Positions 12,491 through 36,621 are shown, numbered from the stretch's first letter. The stretch: 36,621 nt of DNA from Octopus bimaculoides (GCF_001194135.2 NC_068989.1:34317390-34354010); one strand, 5' to 3'. Notes: generated by a model from the sequence alone, not told the origin. A program made the numbers and translations.

Positions 12491-12522
<32 letters not shown>

Positions 12523-14881: not shown

Positions 14882-15434
14882 TGTAATGGATAGCTACCAA
14901 CACTCTAAGCAAAGATTCGAAACCGAATCCACATTTTCCTACAAATCCTCGGTCTATTGTTCTTGCCTGATGCACTAAGAAGTCTATGAGAATAAGCTGA
15001 CTTCTTAGACCTTTTCAAGTCATTCAAGCGTCAGAACTGATACAGAGGAAAACCCTTCGTTTATCTCGACCTACTTTGGTTTGAAACTATATAAATAAGC
15101 AACATCAAGTTAATTCTTCCTCATTGGTTATTTGGCGCCTACCCGAAGAACACATTTCTCTTGCCAAATTCAAGCATGGCTTGTCATGCGCGACAACACA
15201 ATCTTTACTCTTTCTTCGGAGAGGAAGCTATCTACCATACACAATGGACCATGGAACTAAAGAGAGTTTGTTTACTGCAACAACAAACAAGCTGTGTATA
15301 CAAACAACTCGAAAAAAGTAATTTTCTATATTCTAACGGCCATCATAATAATCATCGCAACACATGATTATTGTAATTTGTGACCTCCGATGTTTATAAA
15401 CTACTAAAATTGGATCTTTCACACTGCCGTTACA
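14882..15434 (+). mobile_element. 3' LTR of a Gypsy-type element (TGTAATGG...CCGTTACA) preceded by a purine-rich tract
   Basis: Inverted termini TGTAA(T)GG / CCGTTACA; GGGAGGAGTGTGA at 14869-14881 as PPT; TATATAAA near 15087; shares GAAACCGAATCCACA 37 nt from its start with the LTR ending at 17025. Confidence 0.65.
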
Positions 15435-15896
15435 CTTAAACGTTACACACATGCACGCACGTACACACACACACACATAAACTTTGCAGAAATAAGTTTT
15501 CGAATAAGTAGCTTATGATTATGTGAATAAAATTATTGTTTTTAGTTATTAATATTTTATTCGAATACAAAAGAAATCAATATCTTTTTGACCATTCAAT
15601 AACTTGTTCATGTTCGATGCACAAGATGATGACGTCAGGTAAGAGAAACAGAGCACATCACAGGATATTGTTTAGAATACTTTCGATTGATATTAATGTA
15701 GGTTAAACATAAACTCGGAAATTTTTTTTAAATCATGCTTTCCACTTTCATATTCATAATGAATAGTAACAATCGGGATAATATATGTATTTTACGTTAT
15801 GCCAGAAGTTACTGGAAGGTTTAAAAAGTTCTTTCTGCTTAGCTTAGGTTTAGATCTGTCATAAGCCCTAGGACTCATAAGGTTGGAGCTTAACCT

Positions 15897-16105
15897 GGTT
15901 TCTATGGCGTATAAGTGACTGACATTACAACACTACTACCCCTGAACAGGACGCCAATCTGTCGTGGGGTTAATTTTCCGGCTATTATTAGAATTCATTT
16001 ACATCGTGGATTGGAGCAGCATGAAATTGAATATTTTGCTCAAGAACACAACCCACCGCTCGGTGCGGGAATCGAAACTTCGGTCTTTAGTGCAACACCC
16101 AAACA
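15897..16105 (-). mobile_element. SINE with CORE-like central domain, degenerate
   Basis: Minus strand TTCGATTCCCGCACC (B-box-like)..TTCTTGAGCAAAATATTCAATTTCATGCTGCTCCAATCCA resembles a CORE-type segment (recognition). Confidence 0.5.
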
Positions 16106-16324
16106 AATAGGCCTCGCGCTTTTACTTTCTGATAAAAAAGAGAAATATAAGCATTACCTTAACATAATAGTAATTTATACATTCAAAGATTCTGTAAAAT
16201 TTCGTTGGAAAAGTATATACATTATTAACAAAGTTATAAGGATATAAAAGTCAAGGTAGAAAAGTTTAATGATTGCATTTGGCAAATAGATGACAGAAGA
16301 ATATATAATTATATGAGATGGCCT

Positions 16325-16682
16325 TGTAACGGACAGATGTGAGTGTACATCGAAGTTACTAAGTGTAGTGGTAAGATACGAAGGGTCACCACATGTAGAT
16401 AGTCGAAGGCAGGATGAAACAGCGTAATAACAACATCGAAGAGGAAAGGAATACTATATTTATTTGCCGGCAGTGGTTAGTAAAATATACATAGTAGTAA
16501 CTGCCAATAGTGATGAATTGTTGGTGGCTTGCTGGTAGTTGGTAGTGTGTAAGCTATGCAGTCTGCTGACAGAGGAAGAAGGGGTAAGGGTTACGTTGTC
16601 CCTTTCCATTCGGTCGATGCTATTGTTCCTGGTTAATGGCTGATACGAATAGCGATGTGTGCTCTCTATTAGCCGGTTGAAC

Positions 16683-16768
<86 letters not shown>

Positions 16769-17025
16769 AAGAGAGACAGACAGACATACAGACAGACAGA
16801 CAGATGCTCTCAGTTTATATAGGGTATGTCCAGGACATAGGTCAAACCTAAAACAATGGACTGACTCTTCACTGACCAGCAGAGGTCCTTAGGAGGTAAG
16901 GTGTTTCTCATTAATCTCCCAGCATGGAGATAAAACACAATGGAATTAGACATTCGTCGGACAAGTAACAAGTGTGTGGATTCGGTTTCGGATCTTAGTT
17001 AGGCAAGGCTAAGCGATCTCCAGCA
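16325..17025 (-). mobile_element. LTR on minus strand with an embedded tRNA-Trp PBS near its end and a (GA)n expansion
   Basis: Minus strand: AAAGGGG purine tract then TG at 17025; CTATATAAA; AATAAA; CTACA-TG-TGGTGACCC (16398-16383); final CCGTTACA (16332-16325). Confidence 0.6.
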
Positions 17026-17740
17026 CCCCTTTATTATCTTATAATTGTAGTTGTACACAGATTTTTTTGCCGCTCTGTTACCCAATCCGTAGGTAGCAAA
17101 AGTCATTTTTAGGTGACTGCTAGAAGACGTGGAAAAAGGAGAAAGAAAGGGAGTAAGAGAGTCTAGACAAGTAGAGAGGGTAAGAGCTTTGCATAAGGTA
17201 TTTCTCCGTCGGTGCTGAAAGAAAGAAGGAAGAACTGAATTTGGTTACTGTCTTTATATATGTTGGAAAGCTGGATGTAAGTCAGAGAACAATGGAAAGT
17301 AATGGGTTTATCTCTCTCAAGATATAATTAACCCAAGAATGGTAACTTAAACAACAGAACTTAATTGTCACAGTTGACTCTCAAAAATTTCTAAGTGCGA
17401 AAACCGAGAACAATGGGAAGAGAACTCGTAAAAATGTGGATTCGATTTTGGATCCTGGCTTACATAGAATCTAGAAAGTTATTCGTTAATAGTTTACTTC
17501 AAATTCTTGGGAAATGCGCTAGTGATTAATGCAAAAAGATTTACTCTGCTAACGAAAAGCTTATTTGAAAAGCATCTAAATTCTATATTACAAAAAATAT
17601 TAACTCTATTATAGTTAACTCTATCATTTCCCCCTCCTCTCATCTTTTTCTCTCTCACTGTGTATGAATATAACGTTTCTTTATTCATTGCCTGACACCA
17701 AGTTTAACCTCTTACGTTAACTCTCTATGTACCTTTCTTT

Positions 17741-17776
<36 letters not shown>

Positions 17777-18514
17777 GTGATGTAAAGCGTGACTGGAGAA
17801 TCAACCAACCAACCAGCCAGCATTTATATTGACTATTATTATATAAAGATATTTTATAAAAATTATTTAAAATTACAGCATGCAAAATTACAGTACGCAA
17901 AATTTAACAAGTTAATTCTATTGCTAATTTCGTTTATCTGAGATATATGACAGACGCGGTCAGTGTAGTTGATGTAGATATAGATGTAGCAGTGATAGTA
18001 TATCATTATGAGGCAGTAGAACTATTGATTCTCCTCTTGTCTTTACTTTCCACTCTTAGACATCTGAAGTGACTGAGGAGGGACTGAATCAACGAAAGGA
18101 AGTGGGAATCATTAACATCAGCAAGATAGGGACAAATTGGCTATAGAATGAGTTAAGTTTCAGTCGTTTACCTTACTGATGCAGCTTCCAGATAATGGTT
18201 CTCTTAAGATAAACTATGTTGATAAAATCGCTGGATATAAGTTTCTGTTGAAAAGTCAATGCATAAAATGACATTACCAAGGAATTTTCGTTAACTGTTT
18301 AGGCTTCTGGGCAATGGTTCATCGTTTTCATCATCTTCACTATCTCTGTGCTGTCGCTGATGAGAACTTCTTCGTTACTATTTCTCCTGTCAACACTTGA
18401 TATTCAAGAGTACCAGCTGGGTTTTCTAGCCATATTCTGACTTTGTGGGACATATTTTGCCTGTCCTCTGAAGTTTGCGATGAAAATCACTTGCCTTGAA
18501 TCCTTCCAAATGAT

Positions 18515-18562
<48 letters not shown>

Positions 18563-19879: not shown

Positions 19880-20152
19880 TTTAGATGATAACGTTGTTGC
19901 AGTCGCTTCTTCGTCTTCCTCGCGAACTTGCATTTCTGCTCCGGACGACACACAATCCTCCGAAACCTTACGGGCTATTAGGGAACTGACCCATCAAGTT
20001 TCACGCATGTGTAGGAACCGTTCTTCTTCACGGGATTATTCTACAGGGTGGACCAAACATCGCTCTTTCTCGCGCTGACGCGCGCTTTCCTGCTCCACCT
20101 ATTTGCTGGTATCATAAGAAATTCAAGGATCAGGTTGAAAAGTGTACACAGC
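19880..20152 (+). pseudogene. CsRn1-clade Gypsy gag C-terminal fragment
   Basis: LRAIRELTHQVSRMCRNRSSSR (Arg/Ser linker) then CWYHKKFKDQVEKC, the start of the CHCC motif C-X2-H-X9-C-X3-C. Confidence 0.8.
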
Positions 20153-20880
20153 AGTTAGATATTTCCCAGATGCCTTTAGCTTGGCCGAAGCGGTGCCTCC
20201 GCCACTTGACCCTTTCTGACCTCTTCTACTCCATCAAATCTAGAATAGAATCCTTTGTCCTCACTATCCTTCTTGATAGCTATAAAAACAGGAGACCACA
20301 AGCAAAGTTTCTTTTTAGTCACCAGTCGGTGACGCCTCAACAGGCTAGTCACCAGTCGGTGACGACTCATGGAGAACGAAGCCTGGCTGACCAGCTACAA
20401 CCTTGACCAGAGGGAGAAAGAAGTTTACTGTCAGCCACTGTGAGACAACGTCGCACACATAACTAATACGAGCTCGCATCCTTTTCTCTTTAACACTACC
20501 ATCTCTCTCTATATATAAATACTACTATGAANNNNNNNNNNNNNNNNNNNNNNNNNNNNNNNNNNNNNNNNNNNNNNNNNNNNNNNNNNNNNNNNNNNNN
20601 NNNNNNNNNNNNNNNNNNNNNNNNNNNNNNNNNNNNNNNNNNNNNNNNNNNNNNNNNNNNNNNNNNNNNNNNNNNNNNNNNNNNNNNNNNNNNNNNNNNN
20701 NNNNNNNNNNNNNNNNNNNNNNNNNNNNNNNNNNNNNNNNNNNNNNNNNNNNNNNNNNNNNNNNNNNNNNNNNNNNNNNNNNNNNNNNNNNNNNNNNNNN
20801 NNNNNNNNNNNNNNNNNNNNNNNNNNNNNNNNNNNNNNNNNNNNNNNNNNNNNNNNNNNNNNNTCTTTAAACCGTTACAT

Positions 20881-20933
20881 TGGTGACCCGTCCGACTTTA
20901 ACATTTTCCAAATCGTTACAATTGGTGACCCCG
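20881..20933 (+). promoter_or_regulatory. Two tandem tRNA-Trp primer-binding sites
   Basis: TGGTGACCCG (20881) and TGGTGACCCCG (20923), complementary to the tRNA-Trp 3' end (..CGGGGUCACCA); each is preceded by (C/T)CGTTACA. Confidence 0.8.
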
Positions 20934-21898
20934 TAAAAAAAGAATTGCAGCCTTCCCAAGAACCAACAGTTACAACTGTCGACTCCGAGCGAAAGAATTA
21001 CTACCTTCTGCATTTTTGCTGAATTCGAACTAAAGAACTAGGATATCAACAGTCGCTGAACCAAAGAAAACTAATGACAAACTTCGTCACCGCCAAGATG
21101 CACTCTCCTTCGACCTGCTACAAAAAGCACTATACTGCGATGCAACCTACGATGCACTTCACAACAATGCAACGCTGCCGACGCACAAAGTATTCGCCGA
21201 CCAAGAAAGCCTATAAGCGCAACATTTTGCCAGCTACATGCCCAGAAACTAACTGGATGAAAATACAGAAACCCTTACATGCAACCTTTTCAGCATACAC
21301 ACGCAATGGCTACGAACTTTTGCACGTACATAAGATGCCCATTCCGCAATGCACATTCCGCGATGCCCATTCCGCAATGCACAAATTCTGCTACGACTCG
21401 TTTCACCAAAACTGCTAAATTCATGTGCATATTTTTTTTTGTGAATGTTCTATGTCATTATTCATATTTTGCATGTACTTTTTTCTCTCGTTCACTTTGA
21501 AAATGTATTGTTGCATACACACCCGCATGCACCTTTTCCTCAGTGCCTGGCCTGGCACACGCATCTGCACACATGGTTCATAAATACACAAATGAACATT
21601 CATGCTCCACACATACCTTTCTCGCCTGTTTTCCATGCTCAATGCGCCCTTGTAGACACAACTCATTTCTGTAAGACCCTAGGCTGGTCACGCATACATA
21701 GAGAAAGTTTTTGTCCCTTACAACGCGCCAGCATGCCACACTTTTATTCCTGCATGATCGAGGCTTATAATACCTCATGCACCGGCTGGCAGTCTCAGCC
21801 TTACTGCATTAATCACCGGCATATTCAATCCTGTACACTGTATTTGTAATCAATGCACTAGCATTAGCCTCAGCCTTGCAAGCCCTATTGCACACATG

Positions 21899-22126
21899 CG
21901 GCGAGCTGGCAGAAACGTTAGCAAATCGGGCGAAATGCTTAGCAGTATTTCGTCTGCCGTTACGTTCTGAGTTCAAATTCCGCCGAGGTCGACTTTACCT
22001 TTCATCCCTTCGGGGTCGATAAATTAAGTACCAGTTAAGCACTGGGTCGATGTAATCGACTTAATCCCTTTGTCTGTCCTTGTTTGTCCCCTCTATGTTT
22101 AGCCCCTTGTGGGCAATAAAGAAATA
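21899..22126 (+). mobile_element. tRNA-derived SINE with 8-bp target-site duplication
   Basis: Head GCGAGCTGGCAGAAACGTTAGC..GAGTTCAAATTCC (B box); ACACATGC at 21892-21899 and 22127-22134. Confidence 0.9.
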
Positions 22127-23489
22127 ACACATGCACGTGCACCTCTGTTATGCATATCTACTACTTCCTTGTTTTGTCACACTTCTGCGTCAGCTCAATT
22201 CCAATCCCGACTCAAAGCACGTCGGATGTTCACATGCTCTGCGCTCATGTTTAGACATAATTTCCCTCCGTTAGACCCTTGTTTGGTCACGTAATTAACA
22301 GAGAAAATGATCTGTCTCGCGCATCACTTCAGCATGCTTACACTATCGTCCCTGCTAACTCAGCAATTAACCACGACAACAGCACCAGACGCATTTCACC
22401 TTCAGGGCATTTTTCACACTGCAACCCTGCAGGAAGATCTTTCATATCACGAACTGAGAATGCACTCACTCGNNNNNNNNNNNNNNNNNNNNNNNNNNNN
22501 NNNNNNNNNNNNNNNNNNNNNNNNNNNNNNNNNNNNNNNNNNNNNNNNNNNNNNNNNNNNNNNNNNNNNNNNNNNNNNNNNNNNNNNNNNNNNNNNNNNN
22601 NNNNNNNNNNNNNNNNNNNNNNNNNNNNNNNNNNNNNNNNNNNNNNNNNNNNNNNNNNNNNNNNNNNNNNNNNNNNNNNNNNNNNNNNNNNNNNNNNNNN
22701 NNNNNNNNNNNNNNNNNNNNNNNNNNNNNNNNNNNNNNNNNNNNNNNNNNNNNNNNNNNNNNNNNNNNNNNNNNNNNNNNNNNNNNNNNNNNNNNNNNNN
22801 NNNNNNNNNNNNNNNNNNNNNNNNNNNNNNNNNNNNNNNNNNNNNNNNNNNNNNNNNNNNNNNNNNNNNNNNNNNNNNNNNNNNNNNNNNNNNNNNNNNN
22901 NNNNNNNNNNNNNNNNNNNNNNNNNNNNNNNNNNNNNNNNNNNNNNNNNNNNNNAATCCTTTGTCCTCACTATCCTTCTTGATAGCTATAAAAACAGGAG
23001 ACCACAAGCAAAGTTTCTTTTTAGTCACCAGTCGGTGACGCCTCAACAGGCTAGTCACCAGTCGGTGACGACTCATGGAGAACGAAGCCTGGCTGACCAG
23101 CTACAACCTTGGCCAGAGGGAGAAAGAAGTTTACTGTCAGCCACTGTGAGACAACGTCGCACACATAACTAATACGAGCTCGCATCCTTTTCTCTTTAAC
23201 ACTACCATCTCTCTCTATATATAAATACTACTATGAAAAAGTGTACATACAGATACAGGCCGAAATTCTTTACCTTGTATGCTTTACGTACAAACTGTTA
23301 TACTATTAAACTAACCTACCCGTCGTGGTATGGCAACATAAAGTAACGGTAAATAAATATTTCTATAAAAATGTTGATCATCTTCATCGTTCACTCAATA
23401 ACCGTTACAATTGGTGACCCTTTCATCTCCAATAACCCTACCGTTACAATTGGTGACTCCTCCGACTTTAACATCTTTAAACCGTTACA

Positions 23490-24263
23490 GACCCATCAAG
23501 TTTCACGCATGTGTAGGAACCGTTCTTCTTCACGGGATTATTCTACAGGGTGAACCAAACATCGCTCTTTCTCGCGCGGACGCGCGCTTTCCTGCTCCAT
23601 CTATTTGCTGGTTTCATAAGAAATTCAAGGATCAGGTCGAAAAGTGTACACAGCCCTGCTCTTATTCTTCTCAGGGAAACTAGGCCAGGAGGCACTGGGC
23701 ACGAGAGTTGTCTCCTTCATTGATTCACTTTACCGTGCATTTTTTATCCGAGATACTATTTCTTCAAAGTTCTTTATGGTGAACACGGGAGCCAGTGTGA
23801 GTGTCTGGGCTCGAAGGTTTACTGCCACCAATCCTGGTCTCTTTGACATCTTTCTCTACGGGGTGAATCACTCTGCTATTAAAAGCTACGGGCAAATCTC
23901 TCTTACACTGGATTTGTCACTCCGTGGGGATTTCAAGTGGATCTTCGTCATTGCGGACCTGTCCTACTCCATCCTAGGAGCTGACTTCTGACATCACTAT
24001 TCTCTCCTTGTGGACTTAGAGGACGCCGGCTTCTTGTTGATACTACCTCACTCATTGTATCCGGAAAGGATTCTTCTGTTCCTGTTGTGAGCCCTTCTTT
24101 TTTTGTGGCTGCTTTTGTTGACTCTTACCACCAGTTACTCGCTTCGTTTCCAGAGTTGACCGATTTGTTATTTCATCCGTTGAATCCAGCCCATTCCACG
24201 AGGCATTTCACCATGACTAAGAGACCTATTTTTTTATCCCGACCGCACCGTTTGTCTCCAGAG
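23490..24263 (+). pseudogene. CsRn1-clade Gypsy gag end, protease and start of RT (degenerate)
   Basis: CWFHKKFKDQVEKCTQPC (C-X2-H-X9-C-X3-C) QGN* at 23683; -1 frame FMVNTGASVSV (DTG changed to NTG, 23782-23790), WIFVIADLSYSILGADF; then FLSRPHRLSPE, truncated by an LTR. Confidence 0.88.
23674..23680 (+). promoter_or_regulatory. -1 ribosomal frameshift slippery heptamer G GGA AAC at the gag/pol overlap
   Basis: Gag frame CAG GGA AAC TAG; the protease frame (GGG AAA CTA) is -1 relative to it; X XXY YYZ pattern directly before the gag stop. Confidence 0.7.
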
Positions 24264-24859
24264 TGACAGCAGTTACATTTGCCAGATGCCTTCGCTAAGC
24301 AGAATAATGTCTTTGTCACTTGACCCTTCTAACCGCTTCTAGGCCACCAAAAGCTAGAATAGAGATAACTGACCGCCAACGAAATCTATTGTTCTCAACA
24401 ATATGTCTATCCTTCTGGCTGGTTTTGGATAGTTATAAAAACAAGAACTCCGTAAGCCAAAGTCAGTTAGTGAGAACCGAGTCTGGCTGACCGGCTAAAC
24501 AAAACACCGTCTCTGCAGGAAAAGGCAAAGGAGACAACTATGGTAACTCACCAACGAAGCAGTTGTTTCGTCTCACCACTCTCACTTTCACTAACTCACT
24601 TTCTTTTCTCTGTAACATTACTATCACTCTCTATATATACGACTATGAGATCGTGTACACACATATTCAGGCCGAAATTAACTTTCTTTACCTTGCATGC
24701 TTTACGAACTGTCTTATACTATTACACTAGCCTATCCGTTGTAGTATGGCATATATCAAAGTAACGGTAAATAAATACTTCTTTACAACTTCGATCACTG
24801 TTCTTCTTTCATCTTTCACATCTTACAACATGCTGTTGCAATAAATCTTTGCCGTTACA
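24264..24859 (+). mobile_element. LTR C (diverged relative of LTR A/B; closest to the 3559 copy)
   Basis: TG..CCGTTACA; TATAAAA at 24434 with Inr TCAGTT whose A (24465) is 31 nt downstream; GGTAAATAAATA poly(A) region shared with LTR B; no PBS follows. Confidence 0.75.
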
Positions 24860-24959
24860 GAATCATAGATTAATTAGAACATGTCGGTGAAGTGTTATCA
24901 CTTGGCATTCGGCGAGACGAGACCATGCCGGTCAATATTTGCTGTTGGACAAGAACTTC

Positions 24960-25905
24960 GGCTAGAATCTTTACTTCAGCCCAAGATAAAAAACTATGAA
25001 TAGGAAGGCAGTCAAATTGACCAGTCTCATTCAAGAATCCACGACGTTGATGGGGATGTGCTGAACATTCTTTTCCAGAAGTGCTACAAGTTAAAGATGA
25101 AGGTATTCTTGGTAGGGCTCAATTACCTCAAGGTTATTTTAATAGTTGCCCAAGATTAGCCATCTTGAATTGAAAGATGAACTCGAAAGATCGATCAGTA
25201 ATTGCAGCTCCAATAGAGCATCACGCTAATGAGGGAGGAACCGCGATAGAGAGGAAGAAGTCACTAAACAATTTTACAATCTGTTGATGGGTGGTTGAGG
25301 AACCAGAGCTCGCATTTGGAACTGTTGATGCAAAGGCCCCTACGACCGAGTTCCTCAATCATCGTCCTCTCAGTTGCAATGACCTTACCAGGACCCCCAT
25401 CCCCAAACAAGCATCATCAAGATACCAGACATTCAAGTCCAGGCCAGCTCCCTTCTTGGTAACATCATCAATACCCAGTGCAAATAGAGCAGGTCCAAGC
25501 GGGTCACCCTGTTGGACTCCAGAAGCAGAGGGGATGAAGTGATCGCCAAAGGAGAGATAGGAGTGCTCCTGATAAGCTTGCCAAGCAAAGTTATAGAGTT
25601 GTGGGGTATTCTCCTTTCCTGCATGGAGGATGATATTCCGACTGATGGAAATGAAGACATTCCTGAGATCTAGTTTGAGGATGATCTTTGGGGTTTCAGA
25701 AGGCACGTTAGTGAAAGCTCTAGAGGCGTGAGTAGCAACCTCACAACCTACCTTTGTACCCACCTCTAGCTGAGTAGGGGAAAATTCGGCAGACTGGCAA
25801 TTTCATCGTGAGCCGTCGCAGAGTACATCCAACTGCTATGGGTCGGAGGTCACCATTGGGCTTTGTGAGACCAAATAGTTTAGCCCCAATGTCTGGCTCT
25901 TGAGA
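24960..25905 (-). pseudogene. CRE-clade (RLE-type) non-LTR retrotransposon RT relic
   Basis: GAKLFGLTKPNGDLRPIAVGCTLRRL; PTQLEVGTKVGCE; LKLDLRNVF; GVQQGDPLGPALF; WYLDD; GLCINSSKCEL. Order and spacing are typical of CRE-like RTs; frameshifted. Confidence 0.8.
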
Positions 25906-26499
25906 AGCGATGCATATTTATGTGATCGCGTACTAATTTGCATATGACTGCTTAGTTCGTGTATAGTTTTAGTAGGTTCTCCAGCTAGGTGTTGGTTCTT
26001 ACGTATTGTTTTAAATCATCAATGTAAAGAAGATGATATAGAGTTTTTCCATAGCATTCGTAAATGTTAATAGTTTGATTCGGTTTTGTTATAGTGCTTG
26101 TAACTTTTTATATCCTTGACACACGTTGGATATATAAATTACGCAGCAGAGGTTAAATCAATGTCTTCACACGACATTTTTCGCAAGACTACCAAACGCT
26201 CTCTACCCGACTACTACCGACCTCTACTCTTTATAAGAGTTCGGCTAGTCCATTCTTCCAATCTCCCAAGAGTGTCAATGACTCTCGCCACATCTCCCCC
26301 TTTGAAATTGACTACCGTTGGAAGTTAATATTATTTTTATTTATTTATTTTTCTTTCATCACATCTCTATTTTGAGATTTTCCTCCTGGGGAAGTTTAAT
26401 ATTTTTTTTCCGCTTAGGTACTACTTCCAACCGTTCTGTTTGTTTCCTCTTTCTTGTGCTGCTACGACTATGTTCGATTTCTTGTGGTGTTGGAACATC

Positions 26500-29420
26500 A
26501 AAGGTGTCATAGAACACTTCCATGGGTATCTCTTTTCTTTTTTCCGTATATCTATTTTTTAGCTGGTTTAATTGTCTTTTGTGTTCCCATTTTTAACCTC
26601 TTATATATGTCATGTTGCCATTTCTTTTGTTACTACTCCGTCTTCGTAACCTTGTCTTCTATTTTTATATATTTTGAAAAACACCTTGTCACCGATATTA
26701 ACACACTTTGTCGTATTTTTATTGTTTTCCCTACTTGTCTTTCTTACTGGTAGCAGCTTATCAAAATTTGACTTTATTTTTCGAGCAAACATTAGTTCCG
26801 CAGGCGACTTGCCTGAAAAAGCGTTTGGGTTTGGTGTTATCCTAGAAACCCTCAGAAATTGTGTCAATGCTGTGTTATTGACTAGCTCGTTTCTTGATTT
26901 CTTTGATGCTCTTTTAAATGTACCCACGAACCTTTCCGCTTTCCCGTCAGATCTTGAGTGATACGGAGGAGTAAGTAACATGTTCAATTGAGTACATCTA
27001 GCAAAAATTCTTAAATTCATTCGCCGTGGATTGTGTACCGTTATCGGAGACTATGGTATCCGGGACATCATACCAAGCAAAGGGTTCGTGTAGAAATTTG
27101 ACAGTTACCGTGGATGCTGGTTTGCTACATTTACACATTTCTGGTCATTTTGTATAGCTATCTATCACTATTAGATAATATGATCGGTTTAACGGTCCTG
27201 CGAAGTCTATGTATAGTCTGGACCATGGTATATCGGTCTTGGACAAAGGTTGAAATTTTATAAGTGGTGATTTCGTTGCAAGAGCACAGCCTCTGCAGGA
27301 TTTTACCGACTTCTCGATATCTAGATCTATTTTTGGCCAGTAAACATAACTCCTTATAAGCGACTTGATTCTAGAAATTCCTGGATGTCCAGTGTGGAAT
27401 TCCTTTAACATTCGACCTTTCAGTGAGGTAGGCATTACGACCCTCTGTGCTTATATAAGCACATTATCACATATCGAATACAAATTCGAAGCTATGTTAC
27501 GTTCAGCCACACGTATTTTTTCTTTTTTTCTTTTGATCTCAATATTTTTTTTCATTTTTATGATAAACTTGTCCGTCTCTATCTTAATTTTTGTTTCCTC
27601 TAATGTCACAAGCAATTCACGCACAATATTGCATAATATATTTTTTATTTCATTTTCGGCTTTTAACACTGCTATCACTGTGTCTTCTAGTGGTTCACCG
27701 TATTTTGGTATTAACCTTGACAAACCAACTGCATGTCCCAATTTTTTCGATAACAAATACTCCATCTTGAAGTTGTAATTCAGTAGGATCGTTCCCCAGC
27801 GCTGCAATCTGTTGGCTGTATGATTGGGGATACCCTTTTTTGATCCATAGATGGACAATAATAGGCGGTGGTCTGTCTGCAGACGGAACCTTCTTCCATG
27901 TATAGATTCATGGAATTTTTTTTTTACCACAAATACGATGGCTAATGCCTCTTTTTCTATTTGACTGTAGCTTTTCTCAGCCGGCAATAAAAAACGCGAA
28001 GTGAGCTACTGCTTTCTGGCTACCATCTTCATATTTGTGTAAAACCACAACTCCGATACCACTTTTACTAGCATCTGCTGCCACTACTATTTCTAAATTC
28101 GGGTTAAAATGTAATAACGACAATTCCGACGTTAAGACGTTTTTAATTTTTTCAAAACTTTTTTGGCATTTGTCCGACCAGTTCCACTAAGTTATTCTGG
28201 GGTGCTCTTAAATCTTACATATTCAAGATGTATACCTGGTAGTAATTTGCAAGCCCCCAAAATGCTTGTAAAGCTGTAATGTTTGTTGGGTGAGGCATAT
28301 TTTTTATTACACTCGCCTTAGCCGGGTCTAGTCTGAGTCAATTTTCATCAATAATTTGCCCTAGATATTTCATTCTTGACATAAAAATTCACACTTTTCC
28401 TCGCTGAGCTTAAAACTCTTTTATTCTTTGGAAGACCTTTTTAACATGCTCAGCATGCTGACCTCGAGATTCACTTTTTATGAGCATGTCGTCAAGGTAA
28501 GCTACATCGAAATCCGAACCGGCGAGCATAATGTCCATAACTTGTTGGAAAATGCCAGGTGCTACCTTTATACCAAAGGGGAGTCGATTAAATTTATACA
28601 ACCCTTTACGAGTATTTATTGTCAATAATTTTGAACATTCCTCATCGACTGCTACCTGCAAATATACTTCAAATAAGTCCAAATTTGAAAAAAATATTCC
28701 TTCATTCAACTTTGCGAAAATTTCTTCCGGACTTGGTAACGGGTATTGTATGGCATCAAACGTTCGTTTAATCCCGTTGAGAAATCAGCGCATACTCGGA
28801 TTTTATAAGTGTTTTTTTTTTTTTGTTTGTTTACATAAACTGTTGGGGACGCCCATTTTGAGTAAACAATTTTATCAATAACGCCAAGCTTTTCAAGTCT
28901 ATCCAATTCTTCGTTGACTTGTTTCAACGCTGCGAAAGATACCATTCATTTTGGTTTAAAAACCAGTACAACGTTTTCTTTCACTTGAAACTTCGCCTCT
29001 ATTTTGGTACAAAGACCCAATTCCCCAGAAAAAGCTTCAAGAAAAAAAATTTTTTTAATCCTCCGACACCTTATTTATAATAGCAGAAGAACCATTCACA
29101 TTTTTACGAAAAATATTTATGGGGAGGTCTCATAAGTGAAATAGTTCCACCCAATCTGTTCCAAATAAATTTGTTGTATTTTTCAACACAAAAGCTTTGG
29201 CTTTCAAGGTTTTTCCACGAAATGTAACATCACTTATCATTTCGCCCATAAAATACATTTTTTTTCCTGAAACACCTCACGCAATTTTCGAAGTTTTCTT
29301 TAATCTAGGTTTCCCTATCTTTCTCCATGTATCTGTATTAATTATCGTGATATCATTGCCCGTATCCAATTGTAACTTGATATTCAAATTATTCATTTTT
29401 ATAGACACAAATTTTCTTTT
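26500..29420 (-). pseudogene. Gypsy pol (protease, RT, RNase H, integrase), disrupted
   Basis: LQLDTG (DTG at 29366-29358); RVCADFSTGLN; RLPFGIKVAPGIFQ..YLDD; YSQIEKEALA..TDH; FHTGHPG..YWP..CRGC (HHCC); IDFAGP; SDNG; PYHSRSDGKAERFV. Confidence 0.92.
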
Positions 29421-29496
29421 CTGAGCCTCGCTTAGAATTTTTTTTCTTTTTTTAACAATACATTCTTCCTAGAATTTTTAAAATTTGACCCATTTT

Positions 29497-30430
29497 TTAT
29501 TTTGCTATACAATGTGAGCTTTTATGTCCGATTTTTCCACAATCAAAACATTTACGATTTTTAAAAGGACAATTACTTTTAAAATGTAAACCTCCGCACC
29601 CATACCATAGATTTGGTCTTGACGTTCGTTTTTCTTTTTTTTTTTTTATCCGTTTCAGGTCGACACACATTGTATTTGAGAGCAATCTTTTTCTTCATTT
29701 TTATCCGCGTCATGTCTTAAATTTATAATCCTCTGACATTCTTCAGCCAATGCCTGTAGAGTTAATTTTTGGTCCTGTTCTAATTTTGTTAACCTACGGG
29801 AACGTATATCAGCATCTTTTCTGACTGTTAACTCTTGAACAAAAATTAGACATTTGAACAAATCCGGAGTTAATTCATAAATTTGAATTTTTCACACTCT
29901 TTGTTAACGACCTCAACATAGGTGACGAAATCTTCATCTTTTTAATTAAATTTAATCATTGCCAACGAGTATTGAACAGAGAATTTCTTTCACTGAAAAT
30001 TCTCGATAACAACTTAGCTGTTTCATCGAAACAAATCTCACCTGGTTTCTTCGGCAGAATATAGTTACAGTGTTTTTCGTGTTCGGCAGAGGATAACTTT
30101 CTTAAAAGTAGTTGCACCTTCTTCTCGTCATTTCAATTCTTTGAAGATTTCTTCGTATCTTCTAAAATATGCAGAAAAATACCTTCTTCTGGGTTATAAA
30201 TAAATTCTCCAATTGAATTTGCTACGCAGTCTGACGAAAACGAACCTGAAGTAGTTTCAGACTTCTTCACCATTACTTCCAATAACTGTTGGTATTGTTG
30301 TTGTTGCTATTGTAATTGTTGTAACTGCTGTTGTTGCTATTGTAATTGTTGTAACTGCTGTTGTTGCTATTGTAGTTGTTTTAACTGCTGGTGTTGCTGT
30401 TGTAACTGCACTACGCAAGCTCACAAATCT
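29497..30430 (-). pseudogene. Gypsy gag with Gln-rich N-terminus and two zinc knuckles
   Basis: ANSIGEFIYNPEEG; FKCLIFVQ..ADIRSRRLTKLEQD; WYGCGGLHFKSNCPFKNRKCFDCGKIGHKSSHC (double CCHC, first Cys mutated); stops and frameshifts. Confidence 0.85.
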
Positions 30431-30714
30431 TCGATGTTAATGATTTTTTCTTTGGTTTCGTACCACAAAAAAAATTTAAACGTTCGACGCAAGCTCAAAT
30501 ATCTCGTCGCCACTTTTATATCCTTGACACACGTTGGATATATAAATTACGCAGCGGAGGTTAAATCAATGTATTCACACGACGTACTTCGCGAGACTAC
30601 TAAACGTTCTTCGCCCGACTACTACCGACCTCTACTCTTTATAAGAGTTCAGCTAGTCCATCCTTCCAATACCCCATGGGTGTTAATGACTCTCGCCACA
30701 ACATAACCGTTTTT

Positions 30715-30914
30715 AATTGTGGATCTAGTTCAAAACGGGGGCACCAGTATTTTCTTAACGAAACACTAACTTGGGACACTGGTAGAATGTGTCATATAAA
30801 ACATCTTTTACTCTTAGTCTTCTTAAAAAAACGTACATCGCAAGTTATTCCATGTTAAAGTTGTCGTATTTCTGTAATTTCAACCAATCACTGACGTCTA
30901 TTCAGCTGAATAGA
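30715..30914. repeat. 200-bp segment identical to 31299-31498 across an assembly gap
   Basis: The two copies appear identical by direct comparison and diverge immediately after TATTCAGCTGAATAGA. Confidence 0.85.
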
Positions 30915-31301
30915 GTTACTGCTAGCCGGTCATAAAGATGTTATTCCCTGTGATATATTTCATCCGGTTTAATCGTAATTTATACGCATATATTGTTTAT
31001 ATAATAAATTACGCTGTGCGTATNNNNNNNNNNNNNNNNNNNNNNNNNNNNNNNNNNNNNNNNNNNNNNNNNNNNNNNNNNNNNNNNNNNNNNNNNNNNN
31101 NNNNNNNNNNNNNNNNNNNNNNNNNNNNNNNNNNNNNNNNNNNNNNNNNNNNNNNNNNNNNNNNNNNNNNNNNNNNNNNNNNNNNNNNNNNNNNNNNNNN
31201 NNNNNNNNNNNNNNNNNNNNNNNNNNNNNNNNNNNNNNNNNNNNNNNNNNNNNNNNNNNNNNNNNNNNNNNNNNNNNNNNNNNNNNNNNNNNNNNNNNAA
31301 T

Positions 31302-31659
31302 TGTGGATCTAGTTCAAAACGGGGGCACCAGTATTTTCTTAACGAAACACTAACTTGGGACACTGGTAGAATGTGTCATATAAAACATCTTTTACTCTTA
31401 GTCTTCTTAAAAAAACGTACATCGCAAGTTATTCCATGTTAAAGTTGTCGTATTTCTGTAATTTCAACCAATCACTGACGTCTATTCAGCTGAATAGACG
31501 TCAGTGATTGGTTGAAATTACAGAAATACGACAACTTTAACATGGAATAACTTGCGATGTACGTTTTTTTGTTAAGAAGACTAAGAGTAAAAGATGTTTT
31601 ATATGACACATTCTACCAGTGTCCCAAGTTTCAAAGTGTTTCGTTAAGAAATAGATCCA
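31302..31659. repeat. Spacer-less palindrome (about 160-bp arms) centred at 31489/31490
   Basis: ..CCAATCACTGACGTCTATTCAG|CTGAATAGACGTCAGTGATTGG..; arms differ only by distal indels. Confidence 0.9.
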
Positions 31660-32566: not shown

Positions 32567-32610
<44 letters not shown>

Positions 32611-32707
32611 AACAGACAGACAGACACATAGACAGATAGATAAATGTAATATACGCACGCGTGTGAATATGTATGTAAACGACTTGCAGTACAAAAATGG
32701 AAAGGAC

Positions 32708-32962
32708 CGCCTTAGAAATTTTGGAAACATTCGAGGATTCCACACGTGTAGTATAAATAAAACTTTATGAGCGAATTGAGGGATCTGTGAGTACTAAGAC
32801 CAAACTTGCTTAATTATCGTTTTATGGTATATTTGATAAACAATAAAATACCATTCTTTAAAAGTTTTGTTCATATTTGCGGAGCCTAGCATATTAGGCT
32901 CATAAAGTTTTATTTATACTACACGTGTGGAATCCTCGAATGTTTACAAAAATTCTAAGGCG
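32708..32962. mobile_element. MITE-like element with 65-bp terminal inverted repeats
   Basis: 32708-32772 is the reverse complement of 32898-32962 with a few mismatches; 125-bp spacer. Confidence 0.7.
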
Positions 32963-33386
32963 TACTGTTTTATATTAAATATACTATAAACCGGTAATTC
33001 AAACTTGGTGAATGTAGCATGTCATTTCTATATAGTCCTTTCCGAAGTTAAAATTTTTTTTTTTACCAGAGGTCGTAATGTACAGACTTGATAACTTTGC
33101 CGGATTATCCGTAGGTTGGTTTTAATTTGAATTATTTGAAAATTTAATCAGTTATTCAACAGGATTCAGTCAATTTTTACTATTACATCCATCTCGTAAG
33201 GCGGACGTAATCTCTGATCAGAGAACTTTCGGAATACCTACCATTACATCATAAAAAATGGAAGAGAGCAGGAAAGTGGATGGTTGTTTCCTTCTATAAA
33301 AAATTTATGTTAAAAAAAATTAATTTTTATTTTCTTTTTAAAATTTTATTTCTCCCTCAAACTGTGCCCTTCCCTAGTAAATTTCA

Positions 33387-33422
33387 ACTGTTTCACCCGT
33401 CTCGCGAGACGGGTGAAACAGT
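33387..33422. repeat. Perfect 36-bp palindrome
   Basis: ACTGTTTCACCCGTCTCG|CGAGACGGGTGAAACAGT. Confidence 0.95.
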
Positions 33423-34039
33423 AAAAAAAAAAAAGAAATATTTTTACCTTTAAAACTTAAAGTAGTTTGTCCAAATTAAAACAAAATAGCATTAAGTTCT
33501 TAAAGTAATGAAATCTGGAAAGCTGATGTAAATACGAAACAACTAACAGAGATGCGTGTGTGATAGAATAAACTATCTGCTGGCTTGAATAAACAAATTA
33601 CTGAAACCAGAGTGTTCTTCCAAATATAATGTGAAGATGCAGGAATATAAAGGATACCTCTACCACCAGCAGCAGTAACAGATGGGTAACCAGTAAAACT
33701 TCGTTTCTTTGGCGCCGAAAAACGAAAAATATTTTTAAAAAATTGTATTGTGGTCATGATAGCCTTCGAGAATAAAGTTGATTGCATCGAAAAGATAAAA
33801 GGTATAAGAGAAAGAGAAGAGAAAGAGAGGGATCTGAACGAAAAATGTAATAAGGAAGCGTATTCAGAAAGTATTTTGTCGAATGCTCTTTTATTAAATA
33901 GAATACATTTTCTTTATTAATTTTCACTCCGTACAGTCAACAACAGGAAACGTTTACATTCAGATATATAATACCGTTTACTTTTACATGGCAAACATAC
34001 ATTAGACAGACACTACATAATTTTAACAATAGTATGTTC

Positions 34040-34362
34040 CTTTACAAACACATGGTTCCGGAGTAAATGTCATCAACTATATCTTCGGGCCGACCAAAGA
34101 CTCATGAGTGGATTTGGTAGACGACAGCTGAAAGAAGCCTGTTGTATATATATATATGTATATGTGTGTGTATCTTTGTGTCTTGTCATCTCATCACCGC
34201 TTGACAACCGGTGCTAGTGTGTTTACGTCTCCCTAAATTAGCACTTCAGCAAAAAAGACCGATAAAATAAGTACTGTCCTTAAAAAATAAGCCCTGGGAT
34301 CGATTTGCTAGACTAGAACCCCTCAATGCAGTGCTCCAGCAGTCTAATGATTGAAAATAAAA

Positions 34363-34368
<6 letters not shown>
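34040..34368 (+). mobile_element. tRNA-derived SINE, degenerate (family of 8553-8964)
   Basis: CACATGGTTCCGG..GGGCCGACCAAAG..GAGTGGATTTGGTAGACG..CTGAAAGAAGCC..GATAAAATAAGTACT..GTGCTCCAGCA..AATAAAAGAATA. Confidence 0.75.
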
Positions 34369-34416
<48 letters not shown>

Positions 34417-34487
34417 GTTTATAAATAAATGCATACATACATACATACATACATACATACATACATACATACATACATACATACATA

Positions 34488-35508
34488 CGAGGTCTGTACT
34501 GAAAATTATGCAAAAGGTGGGCATAACATTTTTAAAAACCAATATAGCCCCTTCAAATTGCACAAGTTGACATAATAATACTTCCTCTATGCAAAGATAC
34601 TACTCAACCTAATCTCCATCACAAGCGATGCATTTGTGTCATAGTTGAATCCAACTCCTGAATCCTCTTTGAAAAAATTGCACTGTTTTACCCACAACTT
34701 CATCTGTGTCTTCAAATCATTGTACTCTAAGACTGCTCTTCATTGTATCAAACAGGTGAAAGTCAGAAGGCGTCCAGATCCGGGCTGTATGGTAGAAGTG
34801 GGGAGTGCTGATTTGTTATCAAAGATTAATATGGTCGCCCATTGTCGTGGCAAATGTGAATTGTTTTTCAGATTCTTATTCGGGCTCTTCTTTGTAATGG
34901 CTTCTTTAAACCTTTTTAGTGTCTCACTGTTCATGGAACAACCATGTTACAGAAAATCAAGGGCGATGACACTTTTGTCATCTTCTAAAACAGTCATTAT
35001 AACTTACTGTGCTGATCACTGGCTCTTAAATGTCATAGGCCTTAAATAAGAGGTGTGACGCCAATCTGAGGACTAATCTTTCGCTTCCATATCTTAAGGA
35101 TACGCCCACATTTCAAACGCTGCTACCAGAACGGGAAAATTATGTCTTCGTTGGGTTTAAACGCTTCCCGTAGATTAGGGCAGACTTCCACCGTTCTCTT
35201 CTTCAAATTAAGTGTCAAGTACCGTGTTAACCCACTTTGCACACACTTTCCGATTACCGACGTCTTCCACCATCTATATTGCGTTGTGATCACAGTCCAA
35301 ACTCTCAGATTGTTGAGTTTGCTGTACGAATTAATTTTTTCACTTACTGGAGATTTGTGTTAATGGTCGCAAGAGTTGTTTCTCTTTTGCCCGTAAAGAA
35401 GGAAACACAGGAAGAGCTACTCTACCAACATATGTATTTCAAACGACTTGTCAATAAATAAAAAAAAAAGTTATACCTACTTTTGCACTGCTTTCAATAC
35501 AGTCCTAG
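34488..35508 (-). mobile_element. Mariner (Tc1/mariner) DNA transposon, internally deleted
   Basis: TA TSDs at 34486-87 and 35509-10; imperfect TIRs CGAGGTCTGTACTGAAA.. / ..TTTCAATACAGTCCTAG; minus-strand motifs KVCAKWV, HDN (34849-34841), YSPDL (34789-34775), DFHLF. Confidence 0.88.
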
Positions 35509-35579
35509 TAAGTGTGTGCATATAGTATGAGTATGTATGTATGTATGTATGTATGTATGATTATGTGGTAAGAAGCTAG

Positions 35580-35975
35580 TGTAGTGACGTCTTTAATAGC
35601 AGACGACATTTCCGGAAAGCTTATCCACGCATGCGCAGGAACTGGTTCCGGAGGGAATACAGGAAGAGTCTCATGCGCATGCGTGGTCATTCGACGTCCA
35701 AGTTTCGCGCGGTTTTTCATTCTCTTTCTCGCCGGCCGACGAAGAGCCAAGACGTTGTAGCAGTCTCTCTCCAACATTCCAACTCTGGAGCGAGACAAAT
35801 AACCACTCAACATCATTGATGGCGTCTCAGCAACCAAAGGGCGAAGTGCTGCCTATTTCCTCTGTAAATAAATATTGTTGTGTTGATAGTTCAGAATCTG
35901 CGTTCTGTTGTTTCTTCAAGAAATTTAATGTACAGAAGCGAGTATACACCTAATGGTGTATAACCACTTCCTACA
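35580..35975 (+). mobile_element. 5' LTR (396 bp, TGTAG...CTACA) of a tRNA-Trp-primed Gypsy element
   Basis: Inverted termini TGTAG/CTACA; internal AATAAA; AT then TGGTGACCCCGA at 35978-35989, a 12-nt match to tRNA-Trp. Confidence 0.8.
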
Positions 35976-36409
35976 ATTGGTGACCCCGAATAAAGAACAA
36001 CCGCAGCCGAGGATTCTGATCTACCGACCGACAATACTACACGAGCTGTCAACATGCTCGTCACAGATAGAGAATGCACACAATCACTCGCATCAGCTTA
36101 TTCCACAGCTGCAGGACTTTCTCTTGGTCATCACACGGTATTTCCCTACAATTGATGACCCCGAATAAAGAACAACTGCAGCCGGGGATTCTGAGCTACC
36201 GACCGACAATACTACACGAGCCGTCACCACTCAACATGCTCGTCACATATAGAGAATGCACACAATCACTCGCATCAGTTTATTCCACAGCTGCAGGATT
36301 TTCTCTTGGTCATCACATGGCACTTCCCTACAATTGATGACCCCGAATAAAGAACAACTGCAGCCGAAAATCTGAACTGCCGACCAATAATACTACAATT
36401 GGTACCCCG
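35971..36409 (+). repeat. Tandem array of LTR-end + PBS + leader units (periods 175, 182, 65 bp)
   Basis: CTACAATTG(G/A)T(G)ACCCCG starts at 35971, 36146, 36328 and 36393; units 1-3 share AATAAAGAACAA(C/CT)GCAGCCG. Confidence 0.92.
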
Positions 36410-36621
36410 AGCTAAAAGATCTACAGACCTCGTTTCAACAGCCATTGAATTCGTATGTTTCGCGACGTTCAACTTCAGGATTGCCTTTACATTCTCATCC
36501 ATCACAAGTGAAAAGCTAAGAAAATTTTTCTACGTTAAAGTTTTTCATTTTGTCAATGACTTCCAGAGCCTATAACCAAAGACTTCTTTACAGCTAAGAC
36601 CTTTGTGGTTTTTCACACAAA

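What the first reader, a model, noticed from the sequence alone, without database searches (positions are those of the whole stretch)
15376..36409. Recurrent multiplication of the LTR-terminus + tRNA-Trp PBS junction across distinct LTR families (possible 'LTR-end creep' or multi-primer system)
Seen: the junction (CCGT/C)TACA-xx-TGGTGACCC occurs repeatedly instead of once per element. It appears as 40-bp units at 20872-20933 and 23402-23489, as about 180-bp units at 35971-36409, embedded about 60 nt inside a PPT-preceded LTR at 16383-16398 (minus), and in degenerate form (ATTTGTGACCTCCGA, 15376-15390) about 45 nt inside another PPT-preceded LTR. Known: Ty3/Gypsy elements normally have one PBS just 3' of the 5' LTR, everything 5' of the PBS used is copied into U5 of both LTRs, and 3'-CCA tRNA fragments can block LTR elements at the PBS (shown for mouse ERVs). 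Inference: duplicating [U5 end + PBS] and priming from a distal PBS would absorb the older PBSs into both LTRs, lengthening them stepwise and leaving 3' LTRs with internal PBS fossils, which fits what is seen. The arrays could also act as decoys for primer tRNA or tRNA fragments.
Basis: partly seen in the sequence, partly recalled or inferred. Interest (0 to 1): 0.78.

Follow-up and report, generated by a model that had tools for sequence, protein, structure and literature searches.

The report
Repeated LTR-end plus primer-site modules
In an octopus genome window, a group of Ty3/Gypsy-type retrotransposons carries several copies of the short module "LTR end + tRNA-Trp primer site", and related LTRs end at successive copies of it, which suggests that the LTR boundary shifts with the primer site used.

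Summary
The core (..TACA + 2 nt + TGGTGACCC) occurs 6 times at 3 or fewer mismatches against 0.07 expected. It lies in gap-free sequence at 16383-16402(-), 23402-23489 and 35971-36411. At 20871-20933 it starts 8 nt after a gap. The fifth site (15376-15434) could not be confirmed as an LTR.

The motif matches the complement of the tRNA-Trp 3' end for 9-12 nt. Relatives of the adjacent protease ORF are PR-RT-RNaseH-IN Ty3/Gypsy polyproteins. Four relatives from other animals, including Octopus vulgaris, each carry one Trp-type primer site beside the LTR.

The key new result is that the U5 regions of three LTRs (b, d, e) are colinear homologues. LTRs d and b contain termini T1 and T2, each followed by a primer-site copy, and end at T3. 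LTR e ends at the position homologous to T2. LTRs b and e are followed by unrelated flank, not by a primer site, so the fossil modules lie inside LTRs. The direction of change, the duplication mechanism and any decoy or multi-primer role remain untested. The 182-bp array next to LTR f is best read as a leader repeat. No 5'/3' LTR pair is intact, and two gaps break the d element.

The parts
16325..16571 (-). LTR b (3' or solo LTR, or a 5'-truncated one). Tentative start TGTCAGCAG.., end ..CCGTTACA, followed by unrelated flank with no primer site.
   Evidence: U5 is colinear with LTR d (local alignment z=6.0, 0 of 300 shuffles). Coordinates come and the sequence.
16383..16402 (-). Embedded module T1 in LTR b: CTATCTACA + TG + TGGTGACCC (9-nt match to the tRNA-Trp complement).
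16355..16371 (-). Embedded module T2 in LTR b, decayed: CCACTACA + CT + TAGTAAC. It is homologous in position to T2 of LTR d.
   Evidence: alignments; coordinates
16325..16332 (-). Terminal CCGTTACA (T3) of LTR b.
19888..20152 (+). gag fragment, copy 1. Its last 168 nt (19985-20152, 'X') encode the zinc-knuckle region. It is truncated and abuts LTR d directly.
   Evidence: 96% identical to 23487-23654. Homologous upstream context is seen in Logan contig L007.
20149..20531 (+). LTR d, copy 1, 5' part. It runs into gap 20532-20863.
   Evidence: 99.6% identical to 22955-23237. The start is homologous to the TGACAGCAGTTA.. starts at 3559 and 24264.
20864..20920 (+). End of a d-type LTR just after the gap. 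It holds module ACCGTTACA + T + TGGTGACCC (20871-20889) and the terminal ATCGTTACA (20912-20920).
   Evidence: 20871-20920 aligns to 23440-23489 at 86%; sequence
20923..20933 (+). Best primer site of the d family: TGGTGACCCCG, 11 nt complementary to the tRNA-Trp 3' end.
   Evidence: The leader that follows it is homologous to the leader after the single primer site of the O. vulgaris relative L006 (z=8.3, 0 of 1000 shuffles).
20934..22472 (+). Leader and non-coding internal sequence of contig 20864-22472. No gag or pol domains were found. It contains a dispersed repeat of about 200 bp at 21898-22127.
   Evidence: Only one ORF of this stretch (21023-21415) was scanned against Pfam, without a hit. 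The repeat occurs in 8 or more copies in L006.
22955..23489 (+). LTR d, copy 2 (from about LTR position 97 to the end). It starts at gap 22473-22954 and is gap-free to its end.
23402..23420 (+). Module T1 in LTR d: CCGTTACA + AT + TGGTGACCC.
23441..23459 (+). Module T2 in LTR d: CCGTTACA + AT + TGGTGACTC.
23482..23489 (+). Terminal CCGTTACA (T3) of LTR d. It is followed by a truncated primer-site remnant that merges into the gag fragment.
23490..24263 (+). Broken internal fragment: gag zinc-knuckle region ('X', copy 2), protease and the first residues of RT. The rest of gag and most of pol are deleted. The reading frame is split into at least three pieces, with at least two frameshifts and at least one stop.
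   Evidence: ORFs. The protease ORF has 1596 HMMER relatives.
24264..24859 (+). LTR e (TGACAGCAGTTA .. CCGTTACA). It is preceded directly by the RT fragment and followed by unrelated flank. Its end is homologous to T2 of LTR d, and the 9-nt primer-site core after its T1 is absent.
   Evidence: e versus d U5 alignment z=6.7, 0 of 500 shuffles. Offsets, coordinates.
35580..35975 (+). LTR f, a probable 5' LTR of a different family (TGTAG .. CTACA). An AATAAA signal lies about 100 nt before the end.
   Evidence: No significant similarity to b, d or e.
35978..35989 (+). Primer site next to LTR f: TGGTGACCCCGA, 12 nt complementary to the tRNA-Trp 3' end.
35965..36411 (+). Tandem array of 182-bp units (2.4 copies). 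Each unit starts with about 9 nt of U5 end + AT + a primer-site copy. The later copies carry one substitution (36146-36164 and 36328-36346). A fourth variant junction lies at 36392-36411.
15376..15434 (+). Candidate 'a': an exact CCGTTACA at 15427-15434 with a weak primer-site-like stretch 45 nt upstream. Not confirmed as an LTR.

Best explanation
These are cis-acting end modules of a clade of tRNA-Trp-primed Ty3/Gypsy-type LTR retrotransposons of an octopus. Each module has three pieces. The first is the last 8-9 nt of U5 (..TACA), which is the end that integrase recognises. The second is the 1-2 nt that lie between U5 and the primer site. The third is 9-12 nt complementary to the 3' end of tRNA-Trp.

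The module has been iterated in the U5/leader region. Everything between R and the primer site that is actually used gets copied into both LTRs, so the site used sets the LTR end. Modules upstream of the used site become fossils inside U5 of every LTR, as in b, d and e. Modules downstream of it stay in the leader, as in the array after LTR f.

Shown:
- the modules and their excess over chance;
- their match to tRNA-Trp;
- the Ty3/Gypsy affiliation;
- the colinear homology of three U5 regions that end at different successive termini;
- the absence of a primer site after b and e.

Inferred:
- the iterations arose by template switching of reverse transcriptase near the U5/primer-site boundary, where the minus-strand template ends;
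- alternative primer-site use moved the LTR end;
- the change may go either way.
For: - Module excess over chance.
- Complementarity to the tRNA-Trp 3' end for 9-12 nt, using the human tRNA-Trp oligonucleotide printed in bioRxiv 10.1101/400127.
- The protease ORF next to LTR d has 1596 relatives. The long ones are PR-RT-RNaseH-IN(H2C2) proteins, and one relative (P0094) also carries a DUF7041 gag domain.
- Relatives in O. vulgaris (L006) and in three other animals (L009, L010, L011) have one Trp-type primer site directly after the LTR.
- b versus d U5: z=6.0, with three termini in the same order.
- e versus d U5: z=6.7, with e ending at the T2 position of d.
- b and e are followed by unrelated flank, not by a primer site.
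- The site at 20923 is followed by a leader homologous to the leader after the single site of L006 (z=8.3).
- The site adjacent to the current LTR end is the best match in both families: 11 nt at 20923 and 12 nt at 35978. The other copies carry mismatches.
- Cores are identical at 32 of 38 positions between b and d, against 56 of 116 elsewhere in U5.
Against: - The window holds no intact element with paired LTRs and target-site duplication, so 'both LTRs carry the fossils' is not seen directly.
- Both d-type copies are in a 5' LTR position.
- The 5' boundary of LTR b is uncertain, and no polypurine tract adjoins b or e.
- The stretches between the cores of d are not significantly similar to each other, so a simple tandem duplication of a 40-bp unit is not demonstrated.
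- T1 is better preserved than T2 in both b and d. Neutral decay of older fossils would not predict this.
- The core-versus-rest contrast is biased, because the alignment anchors on the cores.
- The species' own tRNA-Trp was not available.
- The assembly is built from short reads with gaps, so the copy number of the 182-bp units may be wrong.
Confidence: 0.55

Rival explanations
1. The modules are only leader repeats. All iterated modules lie downstream of a shorter LTR that ends at T1, in the same way as the 182-bp array after LTR f. LTRs b and e are rearranged or truncated 5' regions, not LTR ends.
For: Both d-type copies are in a 5' LTR position. The f array clearly lies downstream of the best primer site. 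No paired LTRs are available.
Against: LTR b stops being homologous to d exactly at the terminal CA of T3. LTR e stops exactly at the CA of T2. Each is followed by different, unrelated sequence. Random truncation at these exact bases twice is unlikely. LTR e also sits 3' of an internal pol fragment.
Confidence: 0.15
2. The module array is maintained by selection. Several primer sites are kept functional, either to raise priming efficiency or to soak up primer tRNA or inhibitory 3' tRNA fragments.
For: Cores are much better conserved than the rest of U5 between the diverged LTRs b and d (32/38 against 56/116, p=1e-4). T1 keeps a perfect 9-mer in both. PBS-targeting 3' tRNA fragments are known from mouse elements (reviewed in PMC7599909, listed).
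Against: The contrast rests on a single pair of sequences and carries alignment-anchoring bias. T2 is decayed in b, and the T1 core is deleted in e. The embedded copies match tRNA-Trp for only 7-9 nt. No small-RNA or expression data exist. Four relatives manage with one site.
Confidence: 0.15
3. The arrays are an assembly artefact. They come from mis-joined or collapsed repeat contigs around the gaps.
For: Identical 283-nt stretches abut two gaps. Gap 31024-31298 is flanked by a perfect duplication. The first module at 20871 lies 8 nt from a gap.
Against: The modules at 16325-16402, 23402-23489 and 35965-36411 lie well inside gap-free stretches. The units differ from each other in sequence, so they are not collapsed copies. 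The same three-terminus architecture occurs at two unlinked places on opposite strands.
Confidence: 0.05

Closest known systems
Canonical primer-binding site of Ty3/Gypsy (Metaviridae) LTR retrotransposons
   Same: The LTR ends in ..CA. A primer site complementary to a cellular tRNA 3' end (here tRNA-Trp) follows 1-2 nt later, then leader and gag. Relatives with PR-RT-RNaseH-IN order show exactly this design with one site.
   Different: Here the end-plus-primer-site module is present two to four times per LTR/leader region. Copies lie inside U5 of LTRs that are not followed by a primer site.
Tandem repeats in the leader (5' untranslated region) of LTR retroelements, for example insect gypsy-like elements (recalled from general knowledge, not tested here)
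   Same: The 182-bp array after LTR f is a tandem repeat that starts directly at the primer site.
   Different: Each unit here begins with a copy of the U5 end and the primer site itself. In the b/d/e family only the roughly 20-nt module is iterated, not a uniform unit.
Tandem LTR-internal-LTR arrays of non-autonomous elements, such as the Cassandra arrays in plants (PMC7215508, listed)
   Same: At 19888-24859 an LTR is flanked on both sides by the same internal fragment, and a further LTR follows. Consecutive internal pieces therefore share an LTR.
   Different: The internal pieces differ in extent, the two LTRs belong to different subfamilies, and two assembly gaps interrupt the region.
Inhibition of LTR elements by 3' tRNA fragments that pair with the primer site (mouse; reviewed in PMC7599909)
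   Same: The target would be the same kind of sequence, a primer site ending in the complement of ..CCA.
   Different: Nothing here shows tRNA fragments, and nothing shows a decoy effect.

Membership tests
Ty3/Gypsy-type LTR retrotransposon | Long terminal repeats bounded by TG..CA | tested here: met
   LTR e is TGACAG..GTTACA (24264-24859). LTR f is TGTAG..CTACA (35580-35975). LTR b is TGTCAG..GTTACA. In-window repeat copies: d x2 at 99.6%, and the e start also at 3559.
Ty3/Gypsy-type LTR retrotransposon | Primer site complementary to a tRNA 3' end within 0-3 nt of the 5' LTR | tested here: met
   11 nt at 20923 and 12 nt at 35978 match the complement of tRNA-Trp as printed in bioRxiv 10.1101/400127. 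The species' own tRNA was not available.
Ty3/Gypsy-type LTR retrotransposon | pol order PR-RT-RNaseH-IN with the integrase H2C2 zinc domain | tested here: inconclusive
   The window holds only the zinc-knuckle, protease and RT-start fragment (23490-24263). Pfam finds nothing in it. Its long HMMER relatives have RVT_1, RT_RNaseH, Integrase_H2C2 and rve, and one relative carries DUF7041.
Ty3/Gypsy-type LTR retrotransposon | Polypurine tract directly upstream of the 3' LTR | tested here: not met
   LTR e abuts a pol fragment with no purine run. Upstream of the likely start of b the sense strand is pyrimidine-rich. Both copies are deleted or rearranged, so this says little about the family.
Ty3/Gypsy-type LTR retrotransposon | Target-site duplication flanking a paired-LTR element | not testable with these tools
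   The window holds no intact pair, and the same species could not be reached in the collections.
   LTR b has T1 and T2 inside, T3 terminal, then unrelated flank. LTR e has T1 inside, ends at T2, then unrelated flank.
   LTR e ends at the position homologous to T2 of d. LTRs b and d end at T3.
   No intact pair exists. Gaps 20532-20863 and 22473-22954 break the only candidate.
Leader tandem repeat | Head-to-tail units downstream of the primer site used | tested here: met
   Period 182, 2.4 copies, 88% matches at 35965-36397. The first unit carries the only perfect 12-nt site.
tRNA or tRNA-fragment decoy | Binding of tRNA-Trp or its 3' fragments to the extra sites, with an effect on the element | not testable with these tools
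   No small-RNA or binding data were available.

The most novel reading that the evidence does not exclude
An octopus Ty3/Gypsy clade keeps an array of working 'integrase end + tRNA-Trp primer site' modules. Successive replication rounds can then start at different modules. The LTR boundary would slide back and forth along the array, U5 would lengthen or shorten stepwise, and spare sites could buffer the element against primer-site-directed silencing.
Probability: 0.2. Interest if true: 0.75.

Novelty: new variant of a known kind. Interest (0 to 1): 0.52.

Why it matters
LTR boundaries are usually treated as fixed by one primer site and one polypurine tract. Related LTRs that end at successive end-plus-primer-site modules would be a simple way, not described so far as I could find, for U5 to grow or shrink. 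They would also give an element redundant primer sites.

This affects three things: how LTR ends are annotated, how LTR families are delimited in repeat-rich invertebrate genomes, and whether primer-site redundancy bears on tRNA-fragment-based silencing. The evidence comes from one window of a gapped assembly, so for now it is a well-founded lead and not an established mechanism.

Tried and rejected
- **Exact DNA-pattern scans.** Scans of viral and metagenome collections for the module gave only chance hits in phage or bacterial coding sequence and in a bacterial tRNA gene.
- **First word-index protein search.** The search with the protease ORF found nothing. The full HMMER search did find relatives.
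- **Pfam on window fragments.** Pfam found nothing in the window's gag/protease fragment, even at E of 10 or less.
- **Copied tRNA beyond the primer site.** I tested whether the sequence after each primer-site copy continues the tRNA, as read-through of the primer would produce. No site extends beyond 9-12 nt, and gapped scores are no better than shuffles.
- **Simple duplication of the d spacers.** I tested whether the stretches between the cores of d are duplicates of each other. They are not significantly alike. The only strong pair is the same unit seen in two LTR copies.
- **Candidate 'a' (15180-15434).** It is not significantly similar to b, d or e.
- **U5 of the O. vulgaris relative L006.** It is not significantly alignable to d, e or b, so no claim is made about fossils there.
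- **The f leader.** It is not significantly similar to the d-family or L006 leaders beyond the primer site.
- **Unhelpful loci.** L005, L007, L008, L012 and L013 gave no useful LTR or primer-site information.
- **Rfam and ARAGORN.** They found nothing in the window.
- **Literature searches.** Searches for duplicated or multiple primer sites were swamped by unrelated uses of 'PBS' and gave no precedent.

Full report
**What the window is.**
The window is eukaryotic. It is AT-rich (37% G+C), full of microsatellites, and holds eight runs of N. A locus of Octopus vulgaris (L006, GCA_951406725.2, OX597815.1) shares many dispersed repeats with it at 80-92% identity. The window therefore comes from an octopus, but not from that assembly. 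Exact look-ups of window ORFs found nothing.

**Gaps first.**
- Gap 20532-20863 has the interior of an LTR ('d') on its left and the last stretch of a d-type LTR on its right. Order and orientation agree with one LTR. By comparison with the contiguous copy at 22955-23489, about 236 nt would be missing, against 332 N.
- Sequence 20249-20531 is 99.6% identical to 22955-23237, and both stretches abut gaps. The placement of the 1.6-kb contig 20864-22472 between them, and the reading of these two LTR copies as the pair of one element, cannot be trusted.
- Gap 31024-31298 is flanked by a perfect 200-nt duplication, which looks like an assembly artefact. It does not touch the finding.
- The modules at 16325-16402, 23402-23489 and 35965-36411 lie well inside gap-free sequence.

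Yes, for four of the five places.
- TGGTGACCC (1 mismatch allowed) occurs 15 times against 3.6 expected.
- The 17-mer across the junction occurs 6 times at 3 or fewer mismatches against 0.07 expected.
- The terminus CCGTTACA occurs 7 times against 0.5 expected.
- Tandem Repeats Finder gives a period of 182 with 2.4 copies at 35965-36397.
- On the minus strand, CTATCTACA-TG-TGGTGACCC lies 59 nt before a terminal CCGTTACA.
- The fifth place (15376-15434) has only the exact 8-mer. Its surroundings are not significantly similar to any of the LTRs. I treat it as unconfirmed.

**What the motif is.**
The complement of human tRNA-Trp including CCA, as printed in bioRxiv 10.1101/400127, begins with the same letters. 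The copies match it for 12 nt (35978), 11 nt (20923), 9 nt (20881, 23412, 16391 minus) or less. None extends further than chance.

The protease-like ORF next to LTR d (23620-23988) has 1596 relatives in the full HMMER search. The long ones carry RVT_1, RT_RNaseH, Integrase_H2C2 and rve, and one relative (P0094) carries a DUF7041 gag domain. This is the Ty3/Gypsy order.

Relatives fetched with their DNA show the ordinary design, with one Trp-type site 1-2 nt after the LTR:
- O. vulgaris L006, CTACA-TT-TGGTGACCCCCG;
- L009, with 100% identical 173-nt LTRs and an 18-nt site carrying one mismatch;
- L010;
- L011.

The clade is therefore tRNA-Trp-primed, and one site is the norm in the relatives sampled. 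The other, minus-strand Ty3/Gypsy element in the window (about 26100-30700) uses a different site and is not part of the phenomenon.

**The key comparison.**
I took U5 as the stretch from the AATAAA signal to the terminal CA. It is 132 nt in LTR d (22955-23489), 134 nt in LTR b (16325-16571, minus strand) and 84 nt in LTR e (24264-24859).
- LTRs b and d are colinear homologues (z=6.0, 0 of 300 shuffles). Both have terminus T1 followed by two bases and TGGTGACCC. Both then have terminus T2 followed by two bases and a primer-site copy (TGGTGACTC in d, decayed in b). Both end at terminus T3.
- LTR e is also a colinear homologue of d (z=6.7, 0 of 500 shuffles). It has T1 at the same offset of 52 nt, lacks the 9-nt core after it, and ends at the position homologous to T2 of d.
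- After their last CA, b and e continue with unrelated sequence and no primer site. LTR e lies 3' of an internal pol fragment.
- A d-type LTR end on contig 20864-22472 is followed by the best primer site (20923-20933). After that comes a leader that is significantly homologous to the leader after the single site of the O. vulgaris relative (z=8.3, 0 of 1000 shuffles).

So fossil end-plus-primer-site modules do sit inside LTRs. Related LTRs end at successive modules of one array.

**How it most likely works.**
It is established for LTR elements that minus-strand synthesis starts at the primer site, and that everything between R and that site is copied into both LTRs. It follows that, in an RNA carrying several modules, the site used sets the LTR end. 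Upstream modules become part of U5 in every LTR. Downstream modules stay in the leader.

The b/d/e family shows the first state. The array after LTR f shows the second. There the site next to the LTR is the only perfect one, the later copies share a substitution, and the units share only about 9 nt of U5 end.

A new end can only serve if it carries the sequence that integrase recognises. That would explain why the iterated piece is the roughly 20-nt module and not a uniform unit. The stretches between the cores of d are not alike.

How the modules were first iterated is inference. The minus-strand template ends at the U5/primer-site boundary, which is a natural place for reverse transcriptase to switch templates. 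Direction is also open. LTR e may be an earlier, shorter state, or it may be the product of priming at an upstream module.

**A hint of constraint.**
Between b and d, the cores are identical at 32 of 38 positions, against 56 of 116 elsewhere in U5 (p=1e-4). T1 is better kept than T2 in both. This could mean the embedded sites are still used or bound. It rests on one pair of sequences and on an alignment anchored on the cores, so I give the functional reading (multi-primer or decoy) a low probability.

**State of the copies.**
None of the copies in the window is intact.
- The fragment 23490-24263 holds only the gag zinc-knuckle region, the protease and the first residues of RT. It is split over at least three reading-frame pieces, with at least two frameshifts and at least one stop. 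It has lost the rest of gag and most of pol by large deletions.
- The primer site after LTR d copy 2 is truncated.
- The same 168-nt gag piece flanks LTR d on both sides. Both junctions show a few bases of microhomology.
- The flanking LTRs d and e belong to different subfamilies (79% identity over about 215 nt).
- This arrangement resembles tandem LTR-internal-LTR arrays (PMC7215508), but two gaps lie within it.
- Intact relatives exist in other animals (L009).

**Comparison with what is known, and verdict.**
- Each module is an ordinary Ty3/Gypsy primer-site junction. The 182-bp array is an ordinary kind of leader repeat, except that each unit starts with the junction.
- What I could not find described is the presence of fossil junctions inside U5 together with related LTRs ending at successive junctions. 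Those searches were noisy, so absence of a precedent is weak evidence.
- I rate the finding as a new variant of a known kind.
The decoy idea is untested.
- The decisive evidence is a census of paired and solo LTRs in a long-read assembly.

Noticed in passing
window 26100-30700 (minus strand): A separate degraded Ty3/Gypsy element lies here. Its LTRs are about 190 nt (26106-26292 and 30514-30700, 90% identical). It uses a different primer site, starting TGGCGACGAG. Its pol is broken by at least two frameshifts and four to six stops.
   Followed up: partly
window 30715-30914 and 31299-31498; 31335-31651: A 100% identical 200-nt direct duplication flanks gap 31024-31298 and is probably an assembly artefact. 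Next to it lies a 324-nt palindrome (95.7% identity). It contains another primer-site-like word, TGGTGCCCCCG.
   Followed up: no
window 21898-22127; L006 2777-3335, 15741-16027, 17804-18125: A repeat of about 200 bp inside the 'internal' part of contig 20864-22472 recurs in 8 or more copies in the O. vulgaris locus. Some copies are head-to-tail, at 83-91% identity. It may be a SINE or a young satellite.
   Followed up: no
window 19888-24859: The same 168-nt gag piece lies on both sides of LTR d. Both junctions show short microhomology. The next LTR (e) belongs to another subfamily. The arrangement could be a tandem or chimeric product of template switching or recombination, but it is interrupted by two gaps.
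   Followed up: partly
window 25362-25802 (minus strand): A fragment of a reverse transcriptase lies here. It hits RVT_1 (E=3.7e-7) and looks like a non-LTR (LINE-type) element.
   Followed up: no
window 2202-2706, 12144-12512, 32708-32962: Three long imperfect palindromes (78-83% identity) lie here. They are possibly foldback or MITE-like elements.
   Followed up: no
window 3559-3790: A third, truncated copy of the start of an e-type LTR lies here (88% identical to 24261-24475).
   Followed up: partly
L008 5001-10616 (ENA ERZ1194204, NODE_107): An uninterrupted 1871-residue ORF has ten protease-like stretches related to the window's protease ORF. It sits in an unrelated contig of 31% G+C. It shares no DNA similarity with the window and shows no tandem DNA repeat at the threshold used.
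   Followed up: partly
window 16355-16371 (minus strand); 36146-36164; 36328-36346: The decayed primer-site copies differ from the intact ones mainly by G-to-A changes: two in module T2 of LTR b, and one shared by two units of the f array. The numbers are too small to interpret.
   Followed up: no
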